Source: Asterias rubens
Taxonomy: Eukaryota
DNA length: 64,000 nt
NCBI RefSeq assembly: GCF_902459465.1
Contig: NC_047081.1
Span: 62,001-126,000 of the forward strand
Reading direction: 5' to 3'
Positions within the stretch are counted from its first letter, which is position 1, and each line of letters begins with the position of its first letter. The notes beneath the pieces were generated by a model. It saw only the letters and a program-made list of their open reading frames with translations. It had not been told where the DNA came from and did not search any database. The translations under genes and the position numbers were made by a program. Positions 13,656 through 53,500 of this stretch are shown one piece after another.

Positions 13656-14903
13656 TACAACCAATAATACAGGGTTATCAATCATAAGTCACAGATCTGA
13701 CAAGCATGACGTTTTTAAATCATAAACAATTTACCATTGTATTTAGTACATAGTTTATAAAGTTTGACCACAAACCAGTAAAGTGCCGTTTTATTTAAGA
13801 CAATAGTCTCCACCAACGACTTATGTGACTTTTGATTTTCCACTAATGAGTGTTAACCCTCTAAGGTTTTATTTTGCTGGGACTTTCCAAAATATTCAAA
13901 TTAAATCTCTCTTTCTATCAGCTCATCAAGTTTCAAGGTGGATGAGCATGCCATAAATACCGCCCTCTATTGAAAAAGTTGTCACAAATTTAATGAACAA
14001 CTTTTTAAAGATACTTTACTTCAGTTAACTACAAACTACTACTGGTTAAAACGTCTACAGTATATGTTGGCCATTTGTATCCTAAAATATGTGGAAAAGG
14101 TAATCAAAAAGCAAGAAACAATACTCTTTCAAAAACATCACATAAACATCAAAATAAAATCTCATAAAATATTTTTCGATAGGAAATTAGAATAAAAGAA
14201 AGACAATTTTGAAACAAATCTTTTACAGAACTAGATAGAGCTTGATTTCTAAAATAAAACGATTTCAAACACAAAACTACAACTACTTTATATAATTATG
14301 ATGATTGATAAAGCCAAACAGTGGAAATAATATATTCTTTGCACTTAAGCAATTGAGTATATTTTTGCAAGCAGAAGTTTTATTTCATATTTACATTATA
14401 ACCCTTACCATATTCCTTTTGGGAAACAACAAATCAAATTATTTAAAAAAGTCTTTTAAAGTATAATGATGGGAATTTATCTCTCATTAAGAAATATTAC
14501 ATTTGTTCTAGAAAATGTTTTTAATAACAATTGTTTGCACCTTCTTTGCACCTTCAAATAAAAATAAGTCCTGAAACAACTTTTTATAACAAGTTACGGA
14601 TTATGTGTACAATAATAATAAATGTTACCTCATTACAAAACTGCGATTGTCGGTCTTACTTAATGCAGTTTATAACAATTTATAACAATTGTGCAAGTTC
14701 TAAGAACACATGATTGTTGATTTGCATATCAATTCATAGTAATACATTCATTCCAGTATATTTAAACATTTTGAATTATAGATGAAAATACATGATTTGT
14801 AGCGCAAAGATCAGGTGTAGACAAAGTAGGAAAATTTCACTGCCAGCTTTTAATGGATAACAAGACATTATCAGTTATAAAAAATATATGACAAGATAAA
14901 CAC

Positions 14904-15436
14904 CAGGCACTTCACCATAGAGCTGGTAAGCAGAAAACAGTTTATCAAGTTTATTTGCTTACCAAAAACTGTGTAAGTAACCTGTTATAAACTCTTCATA
15001 AATCCAATTGCATTTTAGCTGGTGACTTGCTTTTTTTGCTTAGCAGCTAAGCCAAATGACTCCATAAAGCTATTAAGCAAAAATTATTGATTACATCAAG
15101 TTTAAGATGGTTATTGATTCCAACTAGTATACATTGCATGGTAATTTGGCTCGCTGCTTAGCCGTTTGATGAAACTGGGCCCAATATCATGACTCTGCTC
15201 AACGTAAGCAAAGAATCAGCACTTATTGAAGCAGGGAATTCCGCACTTATGTCAAGCGTATTTCAAAGGTTAGCAGGGAATTTCTGTTTGTGGACAAGCA
15301 TACTATGTATTTTTCGCTTAAACAGCTAGCACAGAAATTTGGTGCTTGCACAGTAAGCGTAGAATGGTGATCGTAAGCGTAGAATGGTGATCATAAGCAC
15401 AGAATTCAACGGTAAGCAGAGCCATGAAATGGGACT
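14904..15436. mobile_element. Two abutting MITE-like elements with GGCCCAATTTCAT-type termini
   Basis: Element ~15177-15436 has TIRs GGCCCAATATCATGACTCTGCT / AGCAGAGCCATGAAATGGGAC. The element to its left ends in TGATGAAACTGGGCC. A second copy of the 15177-15436 body lies at ~16440-16650, and a related left end at ~21984. Confidence 0.6.
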
Positions 15437-15542
15437 ATCGTTTGTAGAGAGATAATGAGAAGTCAGAGCCCTTTTGGATATAATATCACATTATCATTAG
15501 TCCTTGATTCGTACTCAGTAATTTCTCTTTACCTGACTGCAT

Positions 15543-18500
15543 TTATGCTGTGGTTGCAGACATAAAAGACTTTGATTCTTGTCCTTGCTTAAAAACAGTG
15601 ACTGGTAGTAAAGGATGACCTGTGCTCTTTAGATAGTTCTGTCAAACAAACAAAAAAGGCGTATAACATTAAATACGCAGAGCATTAAACAGTTACCAAT
15701 TACAACAATGAGACTTTGTGAAAGACCATTCAAGGTTCAAATTGTGCCTTCAATATTAATTCAGTCTATTCTTTACATTGTTCTTTCTCATAGATCTGTA
15801 TTTTTTATGTACACACATTCAAGGGGTCTCCATCCACCAAGCTCGCTTTTAGGAGACCTCCACTTCATCTATTAAGGTGTTTTCTCATGTAATGTTATAT
15901 TTTGTCATTTTAAATGATTGAGTGGAAAAAATTGAACAATGAACTTAAAGATAAATAAAACACAGAAAACCACAACAAAAACTTAATTGATAGCAATCCT
16001 CTGTTTCCTACATTATTGGTCTAAGATACTTACGTGTGCATATGTCATAGCATTCTGTTTCTCTTGGGGACTTGCTCCCTTGCCAACCCAGACAAAGCAA
16101 TCTTTTGTTGTATCAAGGATGAAGACATCCTAATATAAAAAACAAAAACAACAAATGTAAAAATAAAAATGGCAAACTTAATGAACAATAATTGGGATAG
16201 GCAGGCATAATGCTTGTAACTGACTATTGGCATAAACTGACATAAAATATTTGATTAATGTTGGCATTGATATTGTGCTTTTAATCCAGAATGCTCCAAA
16301 ATGAACTGTCATCATTAATTAAAAGAGTTCTTCTTAAAATACTCAAAGAATTTTTAAGAGCAACATGCAACCTAATATCAGTAATCATAGAGTACATTTA
16401 TTCAGAAATCGTGCATTTTCTATGAAGTTATGCCAACCGTAAATAAAATAAAACGGCGCTTAAGGTAACAGGGAGTTACGCATTTACGTGAAGCCCATTT
16501 CATAGGTTAGCAGGGCATTTTTGCCTGTGCGATTGTGTACTCCACATGGCTAGTCATTCTTCGTTACACAGCTAGCGCAGACATTTGGTGCTTGCACTGT
16601 AAGCGAGGAATGATGATCACAAGTGCGTAATTCTGCGGTAAGCAGAGACATGAAATTTAGCTTAGATGGAAGTAGAAGATCTTGTTGACATACCTCAGGA
16701 GAAAGATTGCTCCGACTCAGTGTTCCTTCATTCTGAACTGTGGAAAACTCAAGCTGTCCGGAGTTATCTGACAACCTGACAAGAAAAATATATAAGTAAA
16801 TCAACTTGTGGCTTCTTTGCAAACTTGAAGAGAATATCTAATGAGTTCCGAGATTGTTCAAAGTTTGTGAAATAATGGCAAGTAGAGGTTTCAGCACACT
16901 AACTCTAACAAACATGATGGCAAGAGGAAGTCCAACAGAATACCAGATATGATGTAATCATTTGCTAATATTAATAGTCAGCCAAACAGACACAGTTTGG
17001 ATTTTTGGATTTACAGATCAAGAAAACAGGTTTGGTCAAAGTCCTGTAAAACCCAACTATTCCCACTTTGAAGATGTTACTGGGACTGGGGATGGATGAT
17101 AGATACGTCACTGTGGTAAAACCCAACTATTCCCACTTTGAAGATGTTACTGGGACTGGGGATGGATGATAGATACGTCACTGTGGTAAAACCCAACTAT
17201 TCCCACTTTGAAGATGTTACTGGGACTGGGGATGGATGATAGATACGTCACTGTAGTCTAAGGGTTACACTGCAGGACTTGCAATTACCAGGTTGTGAGT
17301 TTGAAGACTAGAGTAAGTATTGTAAGTATTCATAACATAGACGTTAAACCAATGTTTGGCATTTATATCCCGTTGTGGGAGCTCCCTTGAAGGGAAGATC
17401 ATCTAAACAACCAAACAAACAAACAAACAAACATGGCTTACTTGAACATGGAAGGAACTGATGTAGTGTCTGGCTTATCATCAGCACTACTCTCAGATGA
17501 AGCTGTTTGTGGAATATCTTCAAAGCATCAATGTCCCATACTCACAAACAACCAAACAACCAAACAAACAAACATGGCTTACTTGAACATAGAAGGAACT
17601 GATGTAGTGTCTGGTTCATCATCAGCACTACTCTCAGATGAAGCGACTTGTGAAAATATCTTCAAAGCATCGATGTCCCTTACTCACAAACAACCAAACA
17701 AACAACCAAACAAACAAACAAACATGGCTTACTTGAACATAGAAGGAACTGATGTAGTGTCTGGTTCATCATCAGCACTGCTCTCAGATGAAGCTGTTTG
17801 TGGAATATCTTCAAAGCATCGATGTCCCATACTCTCTACAGTCTCAGATGTAGCCTTCCCTCGTGTGTTCTTAATCTCCTGAATCCGGGAAATTCCCTGC
17901 AAGCCACCAAAAAACAATAACAATAAATGGAATGAATGGAGCTCAGAACACCAACCCAAAGCAATCAGCAGCTGATGTCACCAAACGCTAGGATTAATCC
18001 GATCTCGTGTTAGGTTAGTAACTCATCCTAACTTAAGATGGGTTCAATGCGTCCGAATGTCTGTGAACATGTAACTTGACTCATCCTAAGTCCCTAAGAT
18101 TAATACTAGGTTAGGATGAGTTTTGTGAAATTGCTGGCAGCACCGAGCCATACAGTTCCTTGAATTTGGCGAGGAAAAAATAAACTCTTTACAAAATGTA
18201 GAGTGTCATGGCTGAGTGGTTAAGAGCATCGAATTCAAGTTCTGGTGCGTTTTCACCGGAGTGTGGGTTCGAATCCCGGTCGTGACACTTGTGTCCTTGA
18301 GCAAGATACTTTACTATAATTGCTTCTCTTCACCCAGGGGTATAAATGGGTACCTGCGAGGGTAGAGGTTGATATTGTGAATGAAAAAGCCTTTGGAGCG
18401 ATATAAACTGTTGCCCAGGTTGTATACTCCCAAGGGAGCTGAGAAACATTAAAAAGGGATGTTATTGGCCCTATGACCAGGGCACTAATGTAAAGCGCTT

Positions 18501-21210
18501 AGAGAATTAAGTGTTAGTTATTAGGCGCTATATAAATCGAAAGTTATGTTAAAATGCAAATGTTGCTAAGACAAAGTAACATAAAGTTAAGAATGAATGC
18601 ATCAACACAGACAACAAAAATATAATAATAATTTTCACAAATGCAGATGGTGCCTAAGATAACTCAAAAGTCTCATCCATGAGCCACATACTCTCAGGCA
18701 GATATCACTCCGTGCAACAGTATACACATTACTAAGACAATACATTTTGATCCAATTATGGTTCATTCCTATGAGACAACTTACCTTGTATTTCTCCATA
18801 GCATTGCAAGTACTTCCACAAAACAAGTAGAGTTTATTTCCCTTGTCAATAATGTACACATCATCATCCGTGACATTGGCCATACAGAATGGAACCTAAA
18901 TTAATCAACAAGAGAAAAAGGTTACATTTATTACAAACAAGTAAACATTTGAGGTCGCCCTAAGCTGCGCTGGATAGACAATATGACGAGGAGAAGTAGA
19001 AGTGTAGGAGAGCTGAGAAGAGTAGGGAATGAAAGAGAACAGGTGATGGCGGTGACTCCAGGAGTCCGTCACAATTACAATTGCAAGTCTTTGCTGAATG
19101 ATGAATGATGAAGTAAATGATTTGAAGTGATGTCTATCAAACAAACTTCTTCATTAAAATAACTTATCAAAGAAATTAAAAAGAATTGACTGATTAGAAC
19201 ACATGTTTTTGTTGTACAATATTTTCTTTGAAACGAAAGGCACCTATTGTGGTAAACATACAGTGTTACATGGATGGCATGTTTAATGTACACAGGAGGA
19301 TTGCCAGAATAAATTCTCTGAGAATCAAAGTTTGTTGTGAAGACCAACTTGAGTTTCTTAGACTGACCTCAGTGACTTGGACTTTCTTAGATGAGCCTGA
19401 AACTTTAAGGAGTCTTGGTTTGTACTGTTCTGGTTCCACATGGTTGAAGCCTGTGTCTACTCCACCATCCATTAAGCTGTTAAGAAAACGCAGTATTATA
19501 ATCATTATTATTTATTGTCATCTTCATCACTCAGTCATTAGAGACAATTATTGTAATACAGTACAAAGGGCCAAAAATGTTCCTTTCTCTGCTTAAATAA
19601 GAGACCATTCTGTGTATACCAATAGTCCCAAAAAACATTCTGTGTATTTTAAGTCTCACCAATAATCTCATTTAGCAAGAGGCAAATTGATTGACTTAGT
19701 TAAACATGTGGTTTTTTGTTTCAACTTTGACACAAAGTTTTTGTGAAAGCCCCCCTGTAATTTCCTGCGGACAAGACATGGCTTATCTGAATTTCAAAGG
19801 TTAAAATAAATTACTACACTTTAAATGTTAATCCTTGAACCTTGTTTCAATGATTGTGGGATACTGCGCCTTTAACGCTGAGCGCCTTACAAGCAGGAAA
19901 TTACGATCACAAGAGGCTACCTGTATGTAACCAAAAACAAACATTTCATCAATTAGGATAATAGGGAGTCAGGCCCATGCTATCATCGTAAAAGTCTACC
20001 ATTTGGACCAAAATTTACCATTTGGATAAACTTACGTGAGGCTCTTGAAGTAAGATTTAAAAAGTGAAGATTCGTTGCGTGCAACTTCACGATGTTGGAC
20101 TGGTCTATCATCAAGAAGGGTGTCCAACTCTACTGTCTTGTAAGCAGCGGTACCATACTCATCCTAACAGGGTGGATGGAAATACAATAATGTTAAAAGG
20201 GTAAAGTAACATCCAGCAACAGAGTCCAGAAGTCTCCTCAAGATGATCAGAGCATAGTGGTTGAAACGTTGAGTCGGTAAACCACCGGTTCTTTTCAGAA
20301 TCAACACTACACAAAAGAGATATTCACATGGTGTTACCGCAAACCTCCCTTAGTTATAAATACTTCCACTATGCAACCATTCAGTTTCAAATCCTACTTA
20401 AAGGGGTAAAGGGAAAAATGGGGGCCAAAGAAGTCACAATGTATCGTACTTATATTATAGCAGATTAAAATGGGTTTGAGTGAATGAATTGGGTTTTAGT
20501 TTGTTGTAGGGTCATGGTGAGTGATAATTGGTTTACATGACAGTGTGAGCTACTATTTCCTATCTGAATCAATCAATCAATCAAGCTACTGACTGCCAAC
20601 ATAGGGCTGGATAGCTAAGTTAGTAGAGCACCTGGTACATTAATCTGGAGGTAGTTGGTTCAATTCCTGCTCCAGTCAATTTTTCTTTCTTCGACTCCAA
20701 ACTTATACATACCTGAGATGACTCTGAACCAATCCAGAAATGTACATCATACTTCAGAATATCTTCTCCTGGATCTTTCTGTAAAGAAATTTCAAATAAA
20801 ACATGTTTAAGAGAGGGTGCGGTTTTGGTACTTATTAGATATCACATAAAATCCAGTTAGGTTTAAGTTGATGATGGCATCAATTTCTGGAAGGACCCCA
20901 TTATGATCTTGGATTTATTTCTTACCCTACATTGCTTTGGACTAAAATGCTTTAAGCAAAGACTTACATAGGTATTGAGCAGAATGTAAGAGTCTCCATT
21001 GAAGAAGTTTCCATATTCCTCCTTTGGCCAATGCTCGACCTTGAACTTATTGATGCGCCAGATCTGCATTCCAACCTTTTCTCCAGCTCCTTCCCAAGCA
21101 GGCTCAGATTCAGCAGATTCTTTCTTGACTTGCTTCTCAGTATCGGACCCAAACATAGCAAGATTGGAATCCTTCCAGTCGTACTTCTTGGCTTTGATCA
21201 TCCCAGACAT
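15543..21210 (-). CDS. Gelsolin-like protein (three-domain), paralog B, ~364 aa, 9 coding exons
   Basis: Exons 21210-20968, 20778-20713, 20163-20036, 19476-19368, 18895-18785, 17896-17733, 16775-16694, 16129-16034, 15638-15543; GT-AG with compatible phases. [30 protein letters not shown]..., [47 protein letters not shown]. Intron positions match paralog A except one. Confidence 0.95.
16440..16650. mobile_element. Second copy of the 15177-15436 MITE-like family (intronic)
   Basis: Shares GGTTAGCAGGG, ACAGCTAGC..AGA.ATTTGGTGCTTGCAC.GTAAGCG and GGTAAGCAGAG.CATGAAAT with the first copy. Confidence 0.6.
17046..17255. repeat. 70-bp tandem repeat, 3 copies, intronic (gelsolin B)
   Basis: ACCCAACTATTCCCACTTTGAAG at 17051, 17121, 17191. 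Confidence 0.95.
17433..17834 (-). repeat. Triplicated 3' end plus splice donor of gelsolin B exon 6
   Basis: A ~110-bp block (last ~100 nt of the exon plus GTAAGCCAT) occurs at 17724 (real), 17574 and 17433, separated by (AAAC/AACC)n. Confidence 0.9.
18203..18537 (+). mobile_element. tRNA-derived SINE, apparently full length
   Basis: A-box TGGCTGAGTGGT (18209), B-box GGTTCGAATCC (18266), central TGTGTCCTTGAGCAAGATACTT motif, tail TAAAGCGCTT...AGGCGCTATATAAAT. Confidence 0.85.
20232..20275 (+). mobile_element. Degenerate Penelope-like terminal fragment with hammerhead-ribozyme-like core
   Basis: GTCTC-CTCAAGA-TGATC...GGTT-GAAA-CG-TT-GAGTC resembles the minimal type I hammerhead (CUGANGA...GAAA-CG-UH) known from PLE repeats, with core mismatches. 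Confidence 0.45.
20601..20690 (+). mobile_element. Short tRNA-derived SINE-like element
   Basis: GGCTGGA...TCCAGTC acceptor-like stem, A-box TAGCTAAGTTAG, B-box GGTTCAATTCC, T-rich tail. Related degenerate copies at ~27320-27402 and ~44511-44598. Confidence 0.65.
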
Positions 21211-24200
21211 GGTGGTTATTTGTCAGGTAAAAAACTTCAAATCAGCAAAACTTCAAATCAAAGAATCAAATCTGAAATCAAATAAAAAACCTGATTAAAT
21301 GTCATAATGCGTACCTACAGTAAAAACAATTTTCCTGTCAAATTTAACCTAAAAACGACCCCAAAACCCAAACAATTGCAGGACAACATTAAATTCCTAA
21401 AGTATACAAACAAGAAGTTCAAACCTTTCTAACCTATCAATTCAACATGAACAATAATGTTTTGTTTTTTTTAATTCCAATGTGTGGCCACAAGAAATTT
21501 GTGTTTGTTGTTACTACCTTACATGAATGAATGAATGAATCATACTCCATGTAGATCCCCTGTCCAAAATATGAATGAAAAGGAAACACACATTTCAACC
21601 ACAACTAGTAAAGTGTAAGATCTATTTGAATTATACACGGTACCAGCAGTATTCAACACAATTGTTCGTTCTCCTTCAATCGTGCCAAGGTTAACAACCA
21701 GATATAAACAAAAGAGAAGTTTAAATTAAAGACCTTTAATATGTGTTGACCATCTTACATAGACCCCAGCTGGTCTATAGAGAGACAATTATAGAACTGA
21801 AATGAAATCTGCCTTATTTATAATGATTACAATCACATGATGTGACTATTGATGCTGATAGGGTGCAAAGATGACACCTGTTCAGAAGAGGTGTGGCTCT
21901 ATCAGGATAGTCACTCCGTCACATCATTGGGATTTAACAAATCAACTTACACATAATGAACCCCAAATTGGATGTTAGTACAGGGCACAATTCATAGAGC
22001 TGCTTAAGCACACTAAGTAGCTAAGCACAACACTATTATGCTTACCAGAATAAGGTCACTTGCCAAATATACAATGTGCCAACACAGTTAAATCAGAAAC
22101 GGTATCCTACTGTAGCATACATGTACAGTGTTATTATAGTAAAACTCCCCTCTGATTCAAACTCTACATTATCATAAAACAAATAGAGTCTTATTGAAGA
22201 GGAAATGTTGTCAATAAAATACAAAAAACAGTCCAAGTTTGGTTGTGTGAAAGTGTAGCTAACTAGCTAAAAGGAAGGAAATTGGACCCGTTCCCGGGTG
22301 CCAATCTAGAGTTGTAGCAGGAAGACATTTGTTATTTGACAATGTAAGTAGGTCATCAGGGTGTAACAGTGCTCATGATAATGTGTGGGTAGGAAATGCC
22401 CATATTTATGAGTTTTGTTGTGTTTTAGTATGCTGCAATGTACAATGTACTGTGTGCATGCTGTTGTAATGTACATTATAAGCAATGCATGCATGCATGC
22501 GGTGCAGTGCATATTGAGTGTGTTTATCATTGATGATATCGTAAATACGAACATGCAATATTTATGTTAAGCTGACAGACAAATAAGAGCTTTTGTAGCA
22601 ACAACTACTTCATTAGATGCTACAAAAGCTCACTGCAGTTTACTACAAGAGACCAATATTAGAGTGTTTCTGTGAAACAATCCAAGCAGTTAAATTACTA
22701 ACTCTTTGAAGTGATAATGGAACCATGAAGGGAAAACAACACTAGTCAGAAAAGCACCAGAATGACAAGTGAATTAGGGCTGACCTTTGCCACATTTATA
22801 AAAATGACTAAAAATAGCCGTTAGACCGCCTCCTTGACAACGAAGCATAGACAGAGTACATGTTTGTCGTTTGTCTGTGGTGACTCAAGGCGACTCAAGG
22901 CGTACTGTAGCATCCCCATCCTGAGTGGATTGAGTCATCCATAAAGAGGCTAGTGATGTTACCTTAGCAACAACAACACACTATAGGCATTTACAAATTA
23001 GTCTTCTACTAGGCATGTTATTTACTCTGGATGGATGAGATGTGGCAGTAACAGATTCCTAATACTACATGTACAGTTCCTTACTAATGGCAATATTTTA
23101 AATTGCATGTAAAAAAACACACATTTCACCCGCATTCATAAAACATAAAAAAAACTTGTTAACATAACTTTGACAAGTACATGTAGACTTTGACTACTCT
23201 GGCAGGCACAATACTGCACAGGTCATATGGGAAAGTTGACAGTTTGTGTCATAATTTCCACATAAATCCAAGAATTAGCACAAGTTGATAAGAACTAGAC
23301 AGTGCAATCTCCATAAAATATAAGATGTTTTATTTCTTCCACTAAGCTGTGTACAAATCATGCCTGCAGGAAGTCTAGGCTCTGTGGCTATTTTGTAATC
23401 GTGTGATGTCACAGGTCACATCGTCTATACATGTACTTGTCAGAATTTGTTTTTAAATGACAATGTAATTTTTTAGTTTGATGTACATACATGTAGGCCT
23501 ATGCTTGCTCTGTTTTAACACTTTTAAGTAAACAGAAAAAGCTGTAAAACCTGACACTTTAAGACAAATTGAGCACTTCCATCTTAAATTGTTGGTGTGT
23601 ATTTCCCAGATATGTGCTATAATCACCACCAAGAAAAATAGCCCACTGCACCCAACAACTGCCATGTTGCACTGTGCTTTTGCTGTGGTGCACTCTACAA
23701 GGTTCCAATACATATTGACATTTTCCTCCTAGAAGTGCCCCTCTGCTAGATGATGGAAATTGCTGTACCCCTTCAAGAGTGAAGGTCAAGGCCTGTCCTT
23801 GTAGGAATACTGCCAATCAAAATAGTCTTTGTTTCCATTTATAAAAACCCAAACTCCCTCCTACATAATCTGTGGGTTCAGGTCACTAAGATGCCAACAC
23901 GTTCGGTAGTGAAAAGAACCACTAACCATAAAACGCCCACTCCTACTGTCCTAAGGAAACGCTTTTGGAAAACACCCAAGCTAATTCATGCCCCAAAATG
24001 GCTTGTTGAGTACTTGTCAACACCAGTGTTTTGTTTACATCCTGTTCGAGTGTGTGGATGTCCAAAAAACAAAACAACAAATCTGTAAACAGTTTGTTTA
24101 TATTCAACAACTTTGAGCTTTAAAATAAGCAACAAGATGACTAAATCTTTCTGTATGAGTGTGTTCCAAATTGGTTAAAGTGGTGGTGCATGGATTATTC

Positions 24201-41500: not shown

Positions 41501-44500
41501 TAGTCTGTTGAAACAGTTCTTACCATGGATACAAGTAACAGGTTCAGGGTTAGGGTTGTCATTACTAGTCTGTTGAAACAGTTCTTACCATGGATACAAG
41601 TAACAGCTTCAGGGTTGGGGTTGACGTTACTAGTCTGTTGAAACAGTTCTTACCATGGATAAGAGTAACAGGTTCAGGGTTGGGGTTGTCGTTACTAGTC
41701 TGTTGAAACAGTTCTTACCATGGATAAGAGTAACAGGTTTAGGGTTGGGGTTGACGTTACTAGTCTGTTGAAACAGTTCTTACCATGGATAAGAGTAACA
41801 GGTTCAGGGTTGGGGTTGACGTTACTAGTCTGTTGAAACAGTTCTTACCATGGATACAAGTAACAGGTTCAGGGTTAGGGTTGTCATTACTAGTCTGTTG
41901 AAACAGTTCTTACCATGGATACAAGTAACAGCTTCAGGGTTGGGGTTGACGTTACTAGTCTGTTGAAACAGTTCTTACCATGGATAAGAGTAACAGGTTC
42001 AGGGTTGGGGTTGACGTTACTAGTCTGTTGAAACAGTTCTTACCATGGATAAGAGTAACAGGTTTAGGGTTGGGGTTGACGTTACTAGTCTGTTGAAACA
42101 GTTCTTACCATGGATAAGAGTAACAGGTTCAGGGTTGGGGTTGACGTTACTAGTCTGTTGAAACAGTTCTTACCATGGATACAAGTAACAGGTTCAGGGT
42201 TGGGGTTGTCATTACTAGTCTGTTGAAACAGTTCTTACCATGGATAAGAGTAACAGGTTTAGGGTTGGGGTTGACGTTACTAGTCTGTTGAAACAGTTCT
42301 TACCATGGATAAGAGTAACAGGTTCAGGGTTGGGGTTGACGTTACTAGTCTGTTGAAACAGTTCTTACCATGGATAAGAGTAACAGGTTTAGGGTTGGGG
42401 TTGACGTTACTAGTCTGTTGAAACAGTTCTTACCATGGATAAGAGTAACAGGTTCAGGGTTGGGGTTGTCGTTACTAGTCTGTTGAAACAGTTCTTACCA
42501 TGGATACAAGTAACAGGTTCAGGGTTGGGGTTGACGTTACTAGTCTGTTGAAACAGTTCTTACCATGGATAAGAGTAACAGGTTCAGGGTTGGGGTTGTC
42601 GTTACTAGTCTGTTGAAACATCTTTGCTACTCTTCTTAAAGCCTTTGCTTGGTCAGTGTTCAGTTTGTATGTCTCTATCATAAGTGTAGCAATGTGATCC
42701 TGAAACAAGATACAAAGATTCAAAGCAGGAGTATTAAGTCCAACCAATCTAACGCATCAGACTCGGTTCTTTATCAATTGCGACTAGAGCAGAAGCCAAA
42801 GCTGTGTTTCAAATAAGGATCTATGGTCATTAAGTATACTTACAATTTCTTGTGGAGGGTAGTTCAGGAATTTAGACTGACTCTGAGCTTGAGCTGGTGA
42901 CTTGAATGTCGACAGTCTTGATTGAGTGATAGGTTGATTGTCCGACCTTAATATCAATTACACCAAACAGAACAAAGTAAGATCTGAAGCTTTGATCAGT
43001 ATGCAAAAGACTTCTCAAAGATAACTTGCGGATTAACATGGCCACAGTGGATTTTCAAACCTGCAAGATTAGATATCCCCAAGAAGCCTCATAACTTTGA
43101 GGGGATACTCGATGCCACAGACTAGCCACCCAAACCCTGTGGATTTGCTGACACAAAGTCAATTAAAATGATGAAGAGAGATCAAACTTACCTATTGATG
43201 AGAGACTGTAGTATCGGCACTGATGTAGAATTGACATGTTCCTTTAGATTACTCAGACATACCAGCTCTGAACTCGCATTACAGGCAAGGATGGCATGTA
43301 CAGTACCTGAAAATAATCATCAACTTAGTCAATATAGTCATTGAGTCTGAGCTCCAAATCCAACTCTATAAGTTTGAGTCCGAGTCAAGGTTTGAGTCAT
43401 TGGTCATCATGGATCAAAGATGACTCGATTTAGAGTCATGCCATTTACCACCTTGTGTATGGATTCTAGCCCCGACCCGATTGAAGGGGTTTCCCCCATA
43501 CAGGTTTTACACCCACATCTAAAACTAAATACTGCTGTAGCCTCTCCAATACATCCAGTTATTGGCACTAGAGCACTTAATTCTCTTAGGGTATCACAAA
43601 CAAGTTGAAAACAATATTTACATGGTGACGGCCAATTGGAAGTAGAATAACACGCTAGTGGCTCTATCTCAACATCATTATTAGACGACGGACCATGGTA
43701 GACACTCTTGGCAAGAAAAGTTGACCTGGGGTCAAAGGTTAGGTCCTTGGAAATTACCCAGATGTCATCTACGGTTCAACAAAGAAACTGAAAGTCAGTA
43801 AAATATGAGGATATATGATGATATAGAAATAAAAGGCCATAGAATATAGAAGGTAAGACGTTACCTTTGCCATAGGAAGTTGATGCTTCTTTCCATGATA
43901 GATTCAAGTACAGCTTCTTCTTTGTGCTTTTCATCATTTGTTGTTTGCGTTTTATTGCCCAAGCCTGGAATAACAGAAATTAGCAAGTCATCAAATATCA
44001 TCATGAACATTTACTTTCAATTCTATTTCCCACCTTTAACTTTGATGGATTCAGTTCTACAGTCATATAATGTCATTGTGGTGCTGTGATTGTATTTTGA
44101 CAACTTTTAGGGCAAATGTCCCTCCATGGTCTACTACAGAGAGTTCACTGTAGTGTGACCCACCAGTAATGAACTGAAAAATGGAGTCTAAGACAAATTT
44201 GACAAATAACATTATAGAAATATAAGGAACTTACTGGTGCGCCAGGCAACATGGAGTTATATGAACAAGTTCTCCGGAATTCACAACCGTAGTACAGGCG
44301 AACATTTTGACTCTTGAAGAACGTCATCGCTGCATTGGGCTCCATTAGGGATATCTTGGTGCTACTTGATCCCTTAGCATCACTGGATGGGTCCGATTTA
44401 AACTGATCTGCCCACAGGAAAAACTGCATCAAGACGATGAAAAGAGCAAGGGGATCAGGGTTTCAGACGGAAAGGATTAGTTTCAATTTATTGTTAATTG

Positions 44501-47500
44501 GGAGACAACCAACATAGGGCTAGATAGCCGTTGGTAGCGGGCTCTCGCTAATCCATCAGTTTAAAGACCAGCTCCAGTAAATTTGCCCTCGTTCAACCAC
44601 AAATGATTGTTCAACTACAAATTAAAGAAGAATTTTACAACGATGACATCATAATTACATAAGGTAAAGAAGTAACATGGTTTTCTAAAATCCTGTTTGT
44701 AGAATGGGGCTAAACAGTGATGGAGCTTGAATATAAGATTTTGGAATGTTATTTTATGAACACACCTTGCATTGGTTGGAACGAGGCGCACTACAAGCAT
44801 AGAAGAATCTGCCTTTGTTCTTGCCTTCCTTCTTAACACACACCATCTTAGCAGCATTGCCATGGTTACACTGAGGAGCGCGGCTGGCTTGAGGGTTATC
44901 AATGGAGGCTAGCGGCGTTGAGGAGTCAAGGCATTGGGTATCAACTTTATTTCTGGCTGTGTGGAAGCGTTGACCAAGGTTGAACAAGATGAGATTAAGA
45001 TGCTCTGTAGTCAAATAATCATCAGAATAAAATTACCGTCAACCCTTAAACACACTAGCTGATTAAAATCCTATACTGCATATTACATATTCTGCAATTT
45101 GGGTTTTCATGGCACATAGTTTAAAATGTTTAATAAAAAAGTGCTGTCAGTTTACCTTTGAGAGCTGATGTGAAGACTTGTTTATAAGAAGCTACTGATG
45201 GGAAGGAAGGAGGGATTTGGACTTGACGTTTGAGGGAGGCAACACCCTGAACTTCACCTGCTGAGGGAAAGAACAATTCCCCACTGACGCTTCTCTGAAA
45301 GTCAAACAAAAACATCCAACAAACATCATTAACTCTTCAACTGGTTGTGGACTTTTCTCGTAGTCAAATGCGGGAGTGAGGGGACAAGTTTAACAGCTGC
45401 TTGGAAAAGTTTAACTATTCTGCTTAATTGTCTCATCTGGTAACCGATCAAACCGTATGTTTTCTGTTTGTTCTGGTTCTGTTCCTGATTCTCCATGAAG
45501 TGGTTTATAAGAGTCAATTCTCTGTACTGGTTATGAAAGTTTTGACCTTTTGCAAATCCAAAATAATTATCATTGCGCTTTACACACAAAATTATGGCAA
45601 ACTGCAATGTGATATCATATGAATAACTATATTTATACAGTCAACCCTCCAACTGTCTGACCGTTCAATCATCCACTGTGGTTTAGAAAGATAGATGCAT
45701 GTATGCCAGCCTGCGATAAGTCATTTAATGATTGAATCTATCAGTATTATCTCTGTTCTCACCCCTGATGAAAGTAAACTCTGTCCAGCTATTGATGAAG
45801 TAGGATTCTTGAAGCCCTTGTATTGTTGCCTCGCTAAAAACTGTAAAGACAAGCCCTCTGCTGAAATCATCAAGAAAACATTAGAAGTGTGAACAATCTA
45901 TGACCACATCAGTCCGATAAAAACAACAGTTCATAAAGGTTAATATTGCAATACTCCTGGAAAAGGGTGTAAGGCTCTATGCCCTTTTTCTCAGGACACA
46001 AAACAAATAACAAGATTCGATTCAAATCTATGTTTTTAACCTAGTATTTGGTTCCCACTTTCCTAACTGGTAAACTTATCAAAAGACAGCCAGGTTTTCA
46101 TATGAATGCAAATAAAGACGTAAAGTCTTGTAACAGCCCGAGCACAGAAAAACCCCAGTATATCATGGCATATGTGACATGACACATTAATATCAGATGG
46201 CACATCTAGAGGACATCACCTGTACAGTCTGGGTAATTATAAGTGTTGCTTGGTGTACTGGATGGGCTGATGGTACCCTGCTGGTCCAACCAGTTACTAT
46301 TGTTGCCTGTAGATACATCTCTCCCTGCCTTAATGCTGAGATTCTGATTGTAAGATGCTTCGTTCTGATGAGGAGTGCTCATCTCTTGTCTCAATTTGAA
46401 GAGACTCCGAGTGAAGTCAGAGATGCTATCATCTTCTACAAAGATCTTTGGTGTATTGAACTGATTTTTGGCTTTGCATGGTCTCCACTTTGAGGGACTT
46501 TGACGAATCTTAGGGCTGTAAGTATATTGTCTCCATTTACAGGGACTTGTAGAAACATCCGGGCTGTAAGCATCTTGAAGTGAAGATGACAAATTGCTGT
46601 GTATATTAGATTGATTTAGGCCTCCATCTTGTCTCAATTTACAGGGACTTCCAGAAAAGTCTGCAGTAGTAGCATCTTGAATTGATGATTGCAAGATGTT
46701 CTGCAACTCAGATTGACATTCGAGATTGTCTTGCCTCCCTTTAGATGGACTTTGCCAAACCTTCAGCCTGTTGGTGTCTTCATAAGTAGATCCCAAGATG
46801 TTCCGCAATTGAGTTTGGACATCATCCCGTCTCCAATTAGGGGAATATGGAGGTACCAGGCCAGTAACATCTTGCTGTCTACAGATATCTTCCATCAACT
46901 GCTTGTCATAGCTTTGGTTGTATCCATTGTGATCCTGTCTCCAGATACAGGGGCGTGAGATGGTAGATTCATTGTGGGCTATATCTTCCATTAGCTGTTT
47001 GTCATAGCTTTGGTTGTATCCATTGTGATCCTGTCTCCAGATACAGGGGCGTGAGATGGTAGATTCATTGTGGGCTATATCTTCCTTCAACTGCTTGTCA
47101 TAGGTTTGGTTGTATCCATTGTGATCCTGTCTCCAGATACAGGGGCGTGAGATGGTAGATTCATTGTGGGCTATATCTTCCTTCAACTGTTTGTCATAGG
47201 TTTGGTTGTATCCATTGTGATCCTGTCTCCAGATACAGGGGCGTGAGATGGTAGATTCATTGTGGGCTATATCTTCCATTAGCTGTTTGTCATAGCTTTG
47301 GTTGTATCCATTGTGATCCTGTCTCCAGATACAGGGGCGTGAGATGGTAGATTCATTGTGGGCTATATCTTCCTTCAACTGCTTGTCATAGGTTTGGTTG
47401 TATCCATTGTGATCCTGTCTCCAGATACAGGGGCGTGAGATGGTAGATTCATTGTGGGCTGTATCTTCCATTAGCTGTTTGTCATAGCTTTGGTTGTATC

Positions 47501-50500
47501 CATTGTGATCCTGTCTCCAGATACAGGGGCGTGAGATGGTAGATTCATTGTGGGCTATATCTTCCTTCAACTGCTTGTCATAGGTTTGGTTGTATCCATT
47601 GTGATCCTGTCTCCAGATACAGGGGCGTGAGATGGTAGATTCATTGTGGGCTGTATCTTCCATTAGCTGTTTGTCATAGCTTTGGTTGTATCCATTGTGA
47701 TCCTGTCTCCAGATACAGGGGCGTGAGATGGTAGATTCATTGTGGGCTATATCTTCCATTAGCTGTTTGTCATAGGTTTGGTTGTATCCATTGTGATCCT
47801 GTCTCCAGATACAGGGGCGTGAGATGGTAGATTCATTGTGGGCTATATCTTCCTTCAACTGCTTGTCATAGGTTTGGTTGTATCCATTGTGATCCTGTCT
47901 CCAGATACAGGGGCGTGAGATGGTAGATTCATTGTGGGCTATATCTTCCTTCAACTGCTTGTCATAGGTTTGGTTGTATCCATTGTGATCCTGTCTCCAG
48001 ATACAGGGGCGTGAGATGGTAGATTCATTGTGGGCTATATCTTCCATCAACTGCTTGTCATAGCTTTGGTTGTATCCATTGTGATCCTGTCTCCAGATAC
48101 AGGGGCGTGAGATGGTAGATTCATTGTGGGCTATATCTTCCATTAGCTGTTTGTCATAGGTTTGGTTGTATCCATTGTGATCCTGTCTCCAGATACAGGG
48201 GCGTGAGATGGTAGATTCATTGTGGGCTATATCTTCCATTAGCTGTTTGTCATAGGTTTGGTTGTATCCATTGTGATCCTGTCTCCAGATACAGGGGCGT
48301 GAGATGGTAGATTCATTGTGGGCTATATCTTCCATCAACTGTTTGTCATAGGTTTGGTTGTATCCATTGTGATCCTGTCTCCAGATACAGGGGCGTGAGA
48401 TGGTAGATTCATTGTGGGCTATATCTTCCATCAACTGCTTGTCATAGGTTTGGTTGTATCCATTGTGATCCTGTCTCCAGATACAGGGGCGTGAGATGGT
48501 AGATTCATTGTGGGCTATATCTTCCATCAACTGTTTGTCATAGGTTTGGTTGTATCCATTGTGATCCTGTCTCCAGATACAGGGGCGTGAGATGGTAGAT
48601 TCATTGTGGGCTATATCTTCCTTCAACTGCTTGTCATAGGTTTGGTTGTATCCATTGTGATCCTGTCTCCAGATACAGGGGCGTGAGATGGTAGATTCAT
48701 TGTGGGCTATATCTTCCTTCAACTGCTTGTCATAGCTTTGGTTGTATCCATTGTGATCCTGTCTCCAGATACAGGGGCGTGAGATGGTAGATTCATTGTG
48801 GGCTATATCTTCCTTCAACTGCTTGTCATAGCTTTGGTTGTATCCATTGTGATCCTGTCTCCAGATACAGGGGCGTGAGATGGTAGATTCATTGTGGGCT
48901 ATATCTTCCATCAACTGCTTGTCATAGGTTTGGTTGTATCCATTGTGATCCTGTCTCCAGATACAGGGGCGTGAGATGGTAGATTCATTGTGGGCTATAT
49001 CTTCCATCAACTGTTTGTCATAGGTTTGGTTGTATCCATTGTGATCCTGTCTCCAGATACAGGGGCGTGAGATGGTAGATTCATTGTGGGCTATATCTTC
49101 CTTCAACTGCTTGTCATAGGTTTGGTTGTATCCATTGTGATCCTGTCTCCAGATACAGGGGCGTGAGATGGTAGATTCATTGTGGGCTATATCTTCCATC
49201 AACTGTTTGTCATAGGTTTGGTTGTATCCATTGTGATCCTGTCTCCAGATACAGGGGCGTGAGATGGTAGATTCATTGTGGGCTATATCTTCCATCAACT
49301 GCTTGTCATAGGTTTGGTTGTATCCATTGTGATCCTGTCTCCAGATACAGGGGCGTGAGATGGTAGATTTGTATCCATTGTGATCCTGTCTCCAGATACA
49401 GGGGCGTGAGATGGTAGATTCATTGTGGGCTATATCTTCCTTCAACTGCTTGTCATAGGTTTGGTTGTATCCATTGTGATCCTGTCTCCAGATACAGGGG
49501 CGTGAGATGGTAGATTCATTGTGGGCTATATCTTCCTTCAACTGCTTGTCATAGGTTTGGTTGTATCCATTGTGATCCTGTCTCCAGATACAGGGGCGTG
49601 AGATGGTAGATTCATTGTGGGCTATATCTTCCTTCAACTGCTTGTCATAGGTTTGGTTGTATCCATTGTGATCCTGTCTCCAGATACAGGGGCGTGAGAT
49701 GGTAGATTCATTGTGGGCTATATCTTCCATCAACTGCTTGTCATAGGTTTGGTTGTATCTGTAGTGGAGTTGTCCTGGTGCAACATTCTTGTCAGTTAGT
49801 GTAGAGATGAATGGAAAGGATTCAGTTGTTGCAGTATAACTAGGATACAATATATCGGATGTTAAAGTTGAATCAAGAATTACCTCAGATCCAAACATAT
49901 CTACTGCCTCTTTCTCTGTGGTGTATGAAGAAAGATTCATTTCAGATCTTGAATGAAGAGTGTCCGATTCTTTTTCTTTGAAGAATGTCTCCCAATGTGG
50001 AAGATGCTCTGATGCTTCTTTCCATTGCTCATCTTTAGCTCCATCCTCATCACACGGCAATGTTGGTACTTGAGGTCTTGCCTGGATGGGAGTGGAGTAT
50101 CCTCCATCTTGGGAAGCGACAGGGAATTGTTGCCGTCTTGCACTGGCTTGGTATAGGGTTGCAGCTGGAGGCCTTCTGCGTACCGTTCCACTCGACACAG
50201 GGTCATTCCAGTAATTCTCTCTCTTTCTCTTTTTAGGTTTCTGCAGGGAGATAAGCATATATGTTTTAATGATCAATTTTAGTTTAGAAATACAAACAAA
50301 TGTAGAGAATGATTCATTTTAAAACCAAATATTGGATGTACACATGAGTGAGTTGTTAAAATATAATCATGAGATGAAACCTGGACTATTCCATTTTACA
50401 TCTGCTCAGGACTCAGACAGCACCGAGTTTACAGTGCATATCGCACATCGGTGTAAAGGTAAAAAACCCAAACTAATAGAATCACCTTGTCACTGAGTCT

Positions 50501-53500
50501 TGGGATGCATCCTTCAGCAGACACATCCTCCTCATTAAAAGGACCCCTCCTCAGCTGAGATGGATGAGGCAACGACGGATGAGGTAACGATGGATGAAGT
50601 AACGATGAGTAAGGATCGATGCATCCTTCGGGAGACATATCCTCATCATTAGAAGGTCCCCTCTTCAGCTGAGATGGATGAGATACCGCTGGATGAGGTA
50701 ACGATGGGTCAGGTAACGATGAGTAATGAACGATGTATCCTTCTGGAGATGTTGTCTGCTCCCTGAGAGGTACTCTCGCTACAGATTCATCATCTGATGG
50801 GTAAAATTGAGTCGCATGTTTAAATATTTTCCTGTATGTTTACAGTGTGTAAGCAATAATATAAGCAGATGGCGCGTTGTCATACCGCACCACACCGGCA
50901 CCTTCAAATGGCTCATACGAATGTTACAAATATTCACCAGCATCACAAAATACCATCTCAAAATACAACCTTGCCCGAAAGTCTTAATGTACAACATAGA
51001 CTTAATGCATTATTGATAATCAGAAAGTTGTAAAAACTATTAACAACGCTGTCTGTATTATCATGACAATTTTGTGAGGTTACTGATTTTAAAGTTGGGA
51101 TTTTGTAATACCAAAAAATAATTACAAATAATTCTTTTAGGAGATTGAACTATTCCCACCTCCTTGTGATATCACATGAATGGTAACATTTGTACTTTAC
51201 TTATTTTACATGATAGCTTCTAATTTACTCACCTCTTATGTCGAGCAATGGCTGACTGGATTGTGGATATCTGTCAATCATCTGATGGTCTTTTGGGATC
51301 ATCCAGCGATCAAGGCAACTCTCTGATTCACATCGGCTTGAAGATTCTTGATCTATCATCTCTGTGTGATCTTCATTGATGATTTCATCTAAGAGTACTT
51401 CTGCCTCTTGATGAATGGAATGAAGGAATGAGGAGCAAGGTCTGGAGGCAGACGGGGACCAAGGACTCGAGGGAGAATCTCTCTTGTTGTTTGTTGACAT
51501 TGGCAGCCACTGAGGATTTACAGAAATCCCAGCATCGTTGTACCAGTCATGGTTGGGCATCGCTGGAGATAAAGTTACTGCTTTTTGAGTTTGGAAGTTT
51601 TCAAACAGACTCCCTGAGCATCTGCCATCAGAATTTTGTTGAAAATGATTCTGATTGCCATGTGAGAAACGTTGACCTGTTTCAAAAAACTGTGGTGAAG
51701 TTGATTGACAGAAGTCCTCTTCTGTATTTTGAGTCTTGATTCTCAGCATAGGGTTTTGTTCATCTTCATTTAGATCAATATTTTCTGAGTATTTTACTGC
51801 TGTTCCTTGATTGAAATAATCCATCTCTGTTTTATGCGACACCATTTCTGTCTTACTCCTCCTTGCCACTCCTCTCAACTTAATTGGGTTAAAGAAAGAA
51901 ACATCCTGAGACCGCTTAGAAATGGGAGAGCAGATTGGAGGAATGACATCAATAGTATGGCTTCCCATCTGAACTTCAGGAACAAGCAACATTTCACCAC
52001 TTATGTTTTCGCTCATCCTCTTTAGAATATTTGAGTGGAAGAATCCTTTTATGTCTCTTCGCTGTGGAGTCTTACGCTGGACGTATTTATCTTGAGACAC
52101 TGTCAGATGATCAGCATTGAATCGGTCTTGATCAACAGGTACGCATTGTTCTGTTGGACTACTACTACTCTCTGCCCAGGTCCGTTGGTTCTTAGACTCA
52201 GCTTCTAACTGTGGACTTACTCTGCTTTGTTGTTGATGTAATCCATAGCTCGATACCTCATTCTCTTGTCTGTTCTCTACAAGTAGGTTCATCCTTGGCA
52301 CAACTTCTTGTTTACCTTGATCCCAAATTCCAGTTATAGGCAGTGTAATGGTCAATTGAGGCACGACACAATCGCTAGTCTCTCCTAGTTCTTGACTTGA
52401 CGTACAATCCATGTTTCTCAGCCACTCCTCAACGGGATACTGGGAGAGGGTTTTCCCGTCTTCATTAACCATCTTGATGCGTTTATCTTCACGGTAATGA
52501 GGGAACTCAGAAGTGGGAACCTGGGATTGGTATTGGATGATTTTAAGATCACCATCTCTGTCTATAATTTCAGCAGGAGCCTCGTTGCTACAGTTAGGCT
52601 TGGGTGATGCTCTGGCATTCTCTGAAGTTAAAGGTAAAGACAATAGAGCATCTTCTCCTGTATCTGGCATCTTATTCTGCATCACAGAATCTTCAGTAGT
52701 TGCATCTTGTGAAGAAACAGGTGGGTGACGCTTTTGCTCATTTTCTTGAAAGTGGTTTCTTGACTTCCATGATGATTCAAAGCCTGTTGTTAACTCATCA
52801 GTGCATTCGGCACACATGTCCTGTAGTGTGTTACTCAACTCAACTCCACAAAGGGTGCAGACTATTTTAGAGTCCGTTATCTCAGCAATGGTTGTGTCTG
52901 AAGTTTCGGAATCTGTACTTGGGATGTCAATAACCAGTTCACTTGGGTCATTCTCAGTGTTCTCACAATTATCCTGGCTAGCTGGGTTATCACCATCATC
53001 CTGATTACTAACATCCTGCTTGTTACTACTCTGATCACCATGGTTTCCCTCATCAAGACTGTTACTAGCAGCATGGTTACTACAATCTTGGTTTATCTCA
53101 TCACTATGGTTGCCATTATCCAAAGGGTTGTTCTCACCATGGTTGTTACTTTCCTCCCTGTCACCCTGGTTACAATTACCCTGGTTACTACAATCTTGAT
53201 TTATCTCATTACCATGGTTGCCAACAGCTTGACTGTTACCATCACCATTGTTTACATCACCATGGTTACTACAATCCTGTTTTGTCTCATCACCATGGTT
53301 ACTACAATCCTGGTTTATCTCATCATCATGAAAGCCATCATCCTGACTAATACTATCACCATGGTTGGTACTATCCTCACCACTGTCACCCTGGTTACTG
53401 TCACCCTGGTTTAACACGCTACCATCTTGGTTACAATGAACATGGTTTATCTCATCATTACAGCTACTGGCATCATCAACATGCGCCCTAATATGGATCC

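What the first reader, a model, noticed from the sequence alone, without database searches (positions are those of the whole stretch)
46884..49759. About 30 near-identical 32-aa repeats inserted in frame in a DNA-repair helicase
Seen: a 4021-bp exon with correct splice phases on both sides, containing ~950 aa of DIAHNESTISRPCIWRQDHNGYNQ(T/S)YDKQL(M/K)E. There are no stops, the only variants are T/S, M/K and I/T, and the single length variant (51-bp unit at ~49321-49371) removes 45 bp and keeps frame. Known: human ZGRF1 is ~2100 aa and I know of no such repeat in it. Inference: a recent coding VNTR tolerated or selected in the linker before the GRF finger, giving ~30 Cys/Trp/His-bearing modules with possible multivalent binding or metal coordination.
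Basis: partly seen in the sequence, partly recalled or inferred. Interest (0 to 1): 0.75.

Follow-up and report, generated by a model that had tools for sequence, protein, structure and literature searches.

The report
Young coding minisatellite in starfish ZGRF1
A 96-base unit has recently been copied about 30 times, in frame, inside a giant exon of the starfish (Asterias rubens) DNA-repair helicase gene ZGRF1; it is real and lies in an expressed exon, but it looks like a tolerated, fast-changing length expansion of a loosely constrained linker, not a new functional domain.

Summary
At 46885-49759 on the minus strand there are 29 units of 96 bp and one of 51 bp, open in one frame only. They sit in a 4021-bp exon (46220-50240) whose splice phases fit its neighbours.

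The gene is the Asterias rubens ZGRF1 orthologue: ZGRF1-like_N domain, GRF finger and SF1 helicase are all present and in order.

The array is not an insertion. One module of an older, degenerate ~32-aa repeat region was amplified; that region is still visible just downstream as four SP[CS]KxR motifs.

Short-read contigs of the closest DNA run give the array node about 20 times the flank depth, where the assembly predicts 27. So the array is real, but its length is either heterozygous or somewhat overstated.

The RNA came only from a source 2-3% diverged from the window. It shows the exon expressed and spliced, with a unit joined to the 3' flank, but at about single-copy depth. The 30-copy state is therefore very recent and probably variable.

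The linker exons evolve almost neutrally (28 nonsynonymous, 12 synonymous differences) but keep frame. No relative of the unit was found, and the fold prediction had low confidence. Metal binding and multivalent binding are unsupported.

This is an ordinary kind of feature in an extreme form. This scan had not reported this array before.

The parts
46885..49759 (-). Tandem array: 29 units of 96 bp plus one of 51 bp, coding 32-aa units in frame (about 958 aa)
49368..49418 (-). Single short unit (51 bp; an in-frame 45-bp deletion), the 4th unit in mRNA order
46220..50240 (-). The exon that holds the array (4021 bp; enters in phase 0, leaves in phase 1)
   Evidence: P0001 (RefSeq ZGRF1-like isoform X3) is 100% identical to its last 257 codons and continues into the next exon
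49760..50240 (-). Unique 5' part of the exon. It begins with KPKKRKRE (50217-50240), which matches the classical basic nuclear-localisation pattern (my reading). Its last codons (QLHYRYNQ) are a diverged partial unit
   Evidence: Covered by RNA contig X1 (49774-50230) and by raw RNA reads, while the intron has none
46220..46884 (-). Unique 3' part of the exon, with older degenerate repeats of ~32-aa period: SPNWRRDD, SPSKGRQD, SPCKLRQD, SPCKWRQ, SPSKWRP, LFKLRQE
   Evidence: score 51 against a shuffle 95th percentile of 37; SP[CS]KxR occurs 4 times, reached by 0 of 20000 shuffles
50486..50793 (-). Upstream 308-bp exon (phase 1 in, phase 0 out) that reconciles the phases. It contains its own in-frame 114-bp x 2.2 repeat
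   Evidence: An X1 RNA contig joins 51233-region letters to 50795/50793
51233..54076 (-). Upstream 2844-bp linker exon, low-complexity and rich in N/Q/D
   Evidence: RNA depth
45763..45861 (-). Next exon downstream of the array exon
   Evidence: tblastn of P0001 against the window
44766..45005 (-). Exon with the GRF zinc finger
   Evidence: (PF06839, E 5.7e-14)
56374..56556 (-). N-terminal ZGRF1-like_N (DUF2439) domain exon
   Evidence: PF10382, E 3e-14
35569..40362 (-). Helicase exons (AAA_11/AAA_12, SF1) and the C-terminus

Best explanation
This is a young coding minisatellite (VNTR). The linker exon of starfish ZGRF1 already held an old, decayed series of ~32-aa modules. One module was amplified in place, by unequal exchange or replication slippage, to about 30 near-identical 96-bp copies. 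Some steps involved two units at a time. The exon is transcribed and spliced as an ordinary exon, so the assembled allele would add about 950 residues of probably disordered, polar, Trp/Tyr-bearing sequence between the N-terminal ZGRF1-like_N domain and the GRF finger plus helicase. The array stays open because any frameshift or stop would cut off the helicase downstream. The amino-acid sequence of the linker itself is barely constrained, so the expansion is tolerated rather than selected. Copy number differs between close relatives and probably between the two haplotypes of the sequenced animal. Shown: the array, the frame, the exon borders, the gene identity, the older repeats, the multi-copy depth in DNA reads, and expression and splicing of the exon in a close relative. 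Inferred: the mechanism of expansion, disorder, neutrality, and translation of the 30-unit allele.
For: Array and frame. Youth: only 6 variable sites per 96 bp and 11 unit types. Blocks of identical neighbours and a repeated two-unit pattern (units 22-23 equal units 24-25) point to multi-unit steps. In-place origin from older repeats. Gene identity. Exon borders and phases. DNA reads: in X16, which is almost letter-identical to the window, a 49-base array node has depth 3410.5 against 172.6 for the single-copy flank contig, about 20 times; the assembly holds that node 27 times. A node present 4 times in the assembly has depth 340, about 2 times. This fits a real array confined to this locus with a shorter second haplotype. 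RNA: X1 contigs cover exons and not introns. One contig is spliced from 51233 to 50793. One covers 49774-50230. One runs from a unit straight into 255 letters that begin with the reverse complement of window 46855-46884, the 3' flank. Raw RNA reads of X10 cover the 5' flank (0.4-0.6) and the unit bin (1.73), with none in the intron. Weak constraint but kept frame: of 40 listed differences between that RNA and the window in the two upstream linker exons, 28 are nonsynonymous and 12 synonymous. The three listed insertions or deletions are 9, 3 and 3 bases; a fourth of 3 bases is inferred from the letters at the splice joint. No relatives of the unit. Low-confidence fold, mean pLDDT 42. Language-model neighbours are disordered repeat proteins at scores of 0.78 or below.
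Against: No RNA run of the same source as the window was available, so inclusion of all 30 units in mRNA and protein is not shown. In the RNA I could lay, the unit has depth 7.3 against 5.3 for the flank, so there are about one to two identical units there, not 30. The RefSeq isoform I could retrieve (X3) starts at a Met inside the last unit; I could not retrieve the longer isoforms. Four old copies keep the SP[CS]KxR core while the rest of the module has decayed. That pattern is what a selected short motif would show, and it speaks against pure neutrality of the module family. The syn/nonsyn count within the array (3:3) is too small to say anything.
Confidence: 0.68

Rival explanations
1. The array is a selected multivalent module. 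Each unit carries a short binding motif (the xPCxWRQD core plus a short helix), and multiplying it raises avidity for a partner in recombination repair or drives clustering through regularly spaced Trp/Tyr/Arg. This would resemble the BRC-repeat expansions of BRCA2 in Trypanosoma brucei.
For: The core SP[CS]KxR(Q)(D) survives in four old, otherwise decayed copies next to the array. The array is in frame and in an expressed exon. Human ZGRF1 binds RAD51 physically (PMC7473174). Recent repeat expansions with functional effect are documented in another recombination protein (PMC2408642).
Against: The amplified unit has lost the S-P-x-K form of the old core (it reads S-R-P-C-I). It has no Phe, so it cannot be a BRC-type FxxA motif. 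A close relative expresses the exon with about one unit at flank depth. The linker evolves near neutrally. No homologue of the unit turned up among 1.84 billion representative proteins. The predicted structure has low confidence.
Confidence: 0.15
2. The array is real, but the assembled copy number is substantially wrong: the assembler over-expanded it, and the true allele is much shorter.
For: The array node depth in X16 is 73% of what 27 copies on both haplotypes would give, and a 4-copy node reaches only half its expectation. Three unrelated arrays in this window all have 28-30 copies, an odd coincidence.
Against: Depth is still about 20 times single copy, so there are tens of units on average. 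The half-depth of variant-specific nodes is what a heterozygous length or sequence difference predicts. Contig word depth is only a rough measure, as the tool itself warns.
Confidence: 0.1
3. The array is not part of the main protein: the exon or the array is skipped or spliced out, or the long allele is a non-functional variant carried heterozygously.
For: No RNA from the window's own source was laid. The only retrieved RefSeq isoform starts inside the last unit. The unit contains weak GT and AG dinucleotides (my reading).
Against: In the related RNA, a unit is contiguous with the 3' flank and no flank-to-flank joint was reported. One X11 read pair appears to join exon 50486 to 50240, inferred from 24 letters of depth in that bin, not from a listed joint. 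The exon begins with a nuclear-localisation-like KPKKRKRE, and skipping its 4021 bp would shift the frame (4021 = 3 x 1340 + 1).
Confidence: 0.07

Closest known systems
Coding minisatellites / VNTRs inside exons (general class; reviewed for mammals in PMC12776774, found, of which I read only the title and the start of the abstract)
   Same: Head-to-tail units of tens of bases, period a multiple of 3, open frame continuous with the exon, near-identical units, signs of copy-number difference between close sources.
   Different: Unusually large: about 2.9 kb and about 950 aa, roughly a quarter of a protein I estimate at about 3900 aa. It sits in a recombination-repair helicase. Polymorphism is inferred here from depth, not measured.
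BRC-repeat expansions in BRCA2 of Trypanosoma brucei (PMC2408642) and repeat-number changes in Drosophila yakuba dmbrca2 (PMC2882388)
   Same: A recent tandem expansion of a ~30-40-aa module within a homologous-recombination protein, arising from a pre-existing repeat family.
   Different: BRC repeats have a defined RAD51-binding motif and a shown function. This unit has no Phe and no BRC-like motif, no known partner, and no evidence that copy number matters.
ZGRF1 of vertebrates (human protein characterised in PMC7473174)
   Same: Same domain order: ZGRF1-like_N, long linker, GRF finger, SF1 5'-3' helicase. About 50% identity over the GRF and helicase part.
   Different: The vertebrate proteins retrieved are 2029-2191 aa. 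Nothing in them, nor in the Acanthaster isoform retrieved, aligns with the array exon: similarity to Acanthaster starts only in the next exon.

Membership tests
ZGRF1 orthologue (host gene) | N-terminal ZGRF1-like_N / DUF2439 domain | tested here: met
   PF10382, E 3e-14, on window 56374-56556 minus strand
ZGRF1 orthologue (host gene) | GRF-type zinc finger followed by an SF1 helicase (AAA_11 + AAA_12), downstream on the same strand | tested here: met
   PF06839 E 5.7e-14, PF13086 E 3.6e-27, PF13087 E 5.1e-49 on P0001. Exons mapped at 44766-45005 and 35569-40362
ZGRF1 orthologue (host gene) | Best matches outside the species are ZGRF1 proteins | tested here: met
   Acanthaster ZGRF1-like at 70% identity; fish, reptile and mollusc ZGRF1 at 48-50%, with E-values of 1e-224 or lower. 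Senataxin-like helicases score far weaker
Coding minisatellite / VNTR | Tandem head-to-tail units, period a multiple of 3, frame open and continuous with both flanks | tested here: met
Coding minisatellite / VNTR | Lies in an exon that is present in mature RNA | tested here: inconclusive
   Met in a 2-3% diverged source (X1, X10, X11: exon covered, intron empty, unit joined to the 3' flank) and by a RefSeq model for the last unit onward. Not tested in RNA of the window's own source, and not for all 30 units
Coding minisatellite / VNTR | Copy number varies between individuals or alleles | tested here: inconclusive
   X16 node depth is about 20 times the flank against 27 expected, and variant-specific nodes are at half expectation. 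The X1 RNA unit is at about 1.4 times flank depth. Suggestive only; spanning long reads are needed
Metal-binding (zinc-finger-like) repeat | Four conserved Cys/His ligands at fixed spacing in each unit, and a confident compact fold | tested here: not met
   One Cys and two His per unit. Cys is replaced by Ser in two of the four old motifs. Mean pLDDT 42, no residue above 70. No Pfam stretch passes on its own
BRC-type RAD51-binding repeat | FxxA core motif within a ~35-aa unit (from established knowledge of BRCA2) | tested here: not met
   The unit contains no Phe
Cluster of cyclin-dependent-kinase sites | Repeated S/T-P-x-K/R (consensus from established knowledge) | tested here: not met
   The old flanking copies fit (SPSK, SPCK, SPCK, SPSK). 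The amplified unit reads S-R-P-C-I and does not fit

The most novel reading that the evidence does not exclude
The array is a lineage-specific, length-polymorphic multivalent scaffold. Thirty evenly spaced Trp/Tyr/Arg-bearing modules, derived from an old conserved SPxKWRQD motif, would tune how strongly ZGRF1 binds a recombination partner or concentrates at repair sites. Natural alleles with 1 to 30 units would then differ in recombination or repair capacity. That would be a counterpart to the BRC-number effect in trypanosome BRCA2, in an animal known for regeneration.
Probability: 0.1. Interest if true: 0.7.

Novelty: new member of a known kind. Interest (0 to 1): 0.35.

Why it matters
The result shows how much extra sequence a long, weakly constrained linker of a DNA-repair helicase can absorb: about 950 residues, roughly a quarter of the protein, provided the reading frame to the helicase is kept. 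If copy number really ranges from about 1 to about 30 among close relatives or alleles, the locus is a natural allelic series for testing whether linker length or motif number affects ZGRF1 function. It would also be a very informative length marker for Asterias populations. For annotation it is a caution: short-read RNA cannot be placed inside the array, and gene models may start or break there, as isoform X3 does.

Tried and rejected
(1) Phases. I first found apparent phase clashes on both sides of the exon. Upstream, the 2.8-kb exon ends in phase 1 at 51233 while the array exon starts in phase 0. This was resolved by the 308-bp exon 50486-50793, seen as a spliced RNA contig. Downstream, I proposed an alternative acceptor at 45260. 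P0001 showed instead a separate exon at 45763-45861, so I dropped that idea.

(2) Pfam hits on the array exon (CFAP141, BT4734-like_N, Herpes_UL49_2, Caveolin and others) are sums of weak matches over 30 units. None has a stretch that passes on its own, so I rejected them as artefacts.

(3) An exhaustive profile search with three units plus the 3' flank gave only three hits at E above 1e-4, all unrelated repeat proteins. A word-indexed search for fragments of 172-548 aa found none. The Atlas gave only disordered repeat proteins at scores of 0.78 or below.

(4) An exact scan of JGI metagenome contigs for 32 invariant bases of the unit gave 0 matches.

(5) I looked up genomic places for P0001 and for the Acanthaster isoform P0005, to read the orthologous exon. 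Neither is on record. The longer isoforms (X1, X2) could not be reached because the search tools need a stop-free query of comparable length.

(6) I tested for a shared core among the three ~30-copy arrays of the window (96, 65 and 53 bp). There is no similarity beyond shuffles.

(7) The 20 letters that replace the window's sequence upstream of 49773 in the X1 contig are absent from the window, even allowing 3 mismatches.

The stretch laid (49664-55663) holds exactly one unit, so reads from any unit pile up there.
Full report
**Observation.** Tandem Repeats Finder reports a 96-bp period at 46885-49369 (25.9 copies, 97% matches) and at 49369-49759 (4.1 copies, 99%). The break between the two rows is caused by one short unit. 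The minus strand is open for 1356 codons from 50276 to 46206. Parsing the translation gives 30 cores of STISRPCIWRQDHNGY: 29 are spaced 32 aa apart and one unit has 17 aa (51 bp, 49368-49418). Only 6 of the 96 positions vary, and all lie in the second half of the unit. Three change the protein (T/S, K/M, I/T) and three are silent. There are 11 unit types, and the other five frames carry stops in every unit. The unit-variant string shows runs of identical neighbours and a repeated two-unit block (units 22-23 equal units 24-25). This fits stepwise unequal exchange or slippage.

**Gene and exon.** A protein search with the exon returned one hit, 'protein ZGRF1-like isoform X3 [Asterias rubens]' (P0001, 1253 aa). 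It is 100% identical to the last 257 codons of the exon. So the window is starfish DNA, and the exon's 3' part and donor are in a RefSeq model.
- Pfam finds the GRF finger and the AAA_11/AAA_12 helicase in P0001, and ZGRF1-like_N in the ORF at 56374-56556.
- The best hits outside the species are ZGRF1 proteins of another sea star (70% identity) and of fish, reptiles and a mollusc (48-50%).
- The exon runs from 50240 (acceptor ctccctgcag|, phase 0) to 46220 (donor ACAG|gtgatg, phase 1), which is 4021 bp.
- The 2844-bp exon upstream (54076-51233) ends in phase 1, which at first seemed to clash.
- An RNA contig of run X1 joins the end of that exon to 50795/50793. The sequence there gives a 308-bp exon (50793-50486) with acceptor ccatcag| and donor ACAAG|gtgatt. 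It enters in phase 1 and leaves in phase 0, which removes the clash.
- Downstream, P0001 continues into an exon at 45861-45763 and then into the GRF exon.
- The array exon opens with KPKKRKRE, which fits the classical basic nuclear-localisation pattern. This is my reading and was not tested.

**Origin of the unit.** The 221 codons after the array contain SPNWRRDD, SPSKGRQD, SPCKLRQD, SPCKWRQ, SPSKWRP and LFKLRQE, spaced 16-35 residues apart and mostly about 32. The best alignment of the unit to this flank pairs PCIWRQDHNGYNQ... with PCKLRQDGGLNQ..., and the next core with SPCKWRQ. Its score is 51 against a 95th percentile of 37 in shuffles. The pattern SP[CS]KxR occurs four times; none of 20000 shuffles of the flank reached that (the pattern was chosen after looking). 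The last codons before the array (QLHYRYNQ) are a diverged copy of QDHNGYNQ. So the array is not a foreign insertion. One member of an old, decayed repeat family of the same period was amplified recently. The old copies carry S-P-x-K, the full consensus for cyclin-dependent kinases (established knowledge). The amplified unit reads S-R-P-C-I and has lost it.

**DNA reads.** Run X16 (DNA contigs, almost letter-identical to the window, probably the assembly's own sample) gives these depths:

| Piece | Copies in the assembly | Depth in X16 | Ratio to flank |
|---|---|---|---|
| 6.3-kb single-copy flank contig | 1 | 172.6 | 1 |
| 49-base array node, 49680-49728 | 27 | 3410.5 | about 20 |
| Variant-specific node | 4 | 340 | about 2 |

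Three things follow.
- The unit really is present in tens of copies.
- It is not a genome-wide satellite, because depth does not exceed what this one locus predicts.
- Depth is about 73% of expectation. The simplest reading is a second haplotype with roughly a dozen units. A modest over-expansion in the assembly is the alternative.

Contig word depth is a rough measure, and the tool warns against reading it as copy number.

**RNA.** All RNA runs offered carry a different organism label from X16, and their reads and contigs differ from the window by 2-3% (66 of 67 X10 reads are in the 95-99% class). They come from a sister species or a diverged population; the names are coded.
- In X1, depth is on exons and zero in introns, and a spliced contig is present, so X1 is RNA.
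- A 457-base X1 contig covers 49774-50230.
- Another X1 contig lies on the unit down to 49720 and then continues for 255 letters. These begin with the reverse complement of window 46855-46884, which is the 3' flank. A unit is therefore contiguous with the flank in RNA.
- X10 raw reads give 0.4-0.6 depth on the 5' flank, none in the intron 50264-51263, and 1.73 in the bin with the unit.
- One X11 read pair seems to join 50486 to 50240. I infer this from 24 letters of depth, not from a listed joint.
- No flank-to-flank joint was reported.

However, in X1 the unit has depth 7.3 against 5.3 for the flank. The three X1 observations at the unit are 20 unlike letters above 49773, a 40-letter continuation, and the 255-letter run into the 3' flank. 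They fit a single contig of about 425 bases holding only about 1.5 units. The 20 unlike letters are not in the window. That source therefore expresses the exon with few units and a somewhat different repeat structure. The 30-unit state is very recent: specific to the window's lineage, or even to one allele.

**Constraint.** One search listed 40 differences between that RNA and the window in the two upstream linker exons. Of these, 28 change the amino acid and 12 do not, close to the roughly 3:1 expected without constraint. The three listed insertions or deletions are 9, 3 and 3 bases, and a fourth of 3 bases is inferred at the exon end. All keep frame. The linker is therefore kept open but is almost free to change, which is the setting in which an in-frame expansion is tolerated. 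Within the array the count is 3 silent to 3 replacement sites, too few to interpret.

**Relatives and fold.**
- An exhaustive HMMER search of 1.84 billion representative proteins with three units plus the 3' flank gave only three unrelated repeat proteins at E above 1e-4.
- A search for fragments gave nothing, and a metagenome scan gave nothing.
- Similarity to the Acanthaster protein starts only in the exon after the array exon.
- AlphaFold on four units plus flank gives mean pLDDT 42, with a weak strand-plus-helix pattern in each unit.
- The Atlas places it near disordered repeat proteins at low scores.
- Pfam hits on the exon are additive artefacts with no single passing stretch.

**Interpretation.** The best reading (0.68) is a young, tolerated coding minisatellite in a near-neutral linker. 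It is kept in frame by selection on the downstream helicase, and its copy number is unstable. The rivals are:
- a selected multivalent motif array (0.15), supported mainly by the survival of the SPxKxRQ core in old copies;
- a substantially wrong assembled copy number (0.10);
- exclusion from the main protein (0.07).

Metal binding fails its defining features. The closest documented parallels in recombination proteins are the BRC-repeat expansions of BRCA2 in Trypanosoma brucei and Drosophila yakuba (PMC2408642, PMC2882388), but this unit has no BRC motif. Human ZGRF1 is a 5'-3' helicase that binds RAD51 (PMC7473174). Nothing here links the repeat to that activity.

**Limits.**
- There is no RNA from the window's own source.
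- There are no spanning long reads.
- The longer RefSeq isoforms and the orthologous exons of other sea stars could not be retrieved.
- RNA depths are very low.
- The single-contig reading of the X1 pieces is an inference.

Noticed in passing
window 40734-42620 (minus-strand gene): A 65-bp x 29 array (95% matches) in the same gene. Each unit repeats the end of the exon that codes ...NPNPEPVTLIHG, and it lies between that exon and the next one, which holds the helicase Walker A motif (VFGAGKS). Another note of the scan (s1-150320) calls such exon-boundary arrays 'mirage' minisatellites (unchecked).
   Followed up: partly
window 6007-7488: A 53-bp x 28 array (98% matches), period not a multiple of 3, near the gelsolin-like exons. 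Three unrelated arrays in this window have 28-30 copies each and share no core sequence. The coincidence in copy number is unexplained.
   Followed up: partly
window 50504-50749: The 308-bp exon just upstream of the array exon contains its own in-frame 114-bp x 2.2 repeat (38-aa units, 85% matches). This is another, older coding repeat in the same linker.
   Followed up: partly
window 53255-53877 and 55967-56048: More coding repeats in the ZGRF1 linker: 33-, 72- and 48-bp periods in the N/Q/D-rich 2.8-kb exon, and a (GCT)27 tract on the plus strand that codes a poly-Gln run in an upstream ORF likely to be an early exon.
   Followed up: no
window 49773/49774: In RNA contigs of the 2-3% diverged source, the letters upstream of ACAACTCCACTAC... 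have two alternative contexts. One is the window's 5' flank; the other is 20 letters absent from the window and in frame (reading LESTQIP). That source therefore has a different repeat structure at the start of the array.
   Followed up: partly
window 60618-62500 (minus): A SPARC-like gene lies upstream of ZGRF1: SPARC_Ca_bdg PF10591, E 4e-11, on the ORF at 60615-61217, with follistatin/Kazal-like Cys-rich ORFs at about 61400-61850.
   Followed up: no
window 5169-21222 (minus): Gelsolin-like repeat exons occur twice, for example 20866-21222 and 10112-10770 with near-identical peptide motifs. This suggests two tandem gelsolin-family genes downstream of ZGRF1.
   Followed up: no
window 4409-4552: A run of 144 N (assembly gap or masked), left untouched.
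   Followed up: no
window 38802-39192: A 137-bp x 2.9 repeat (98% matches) inside a helicase intron.
   Followed up: no
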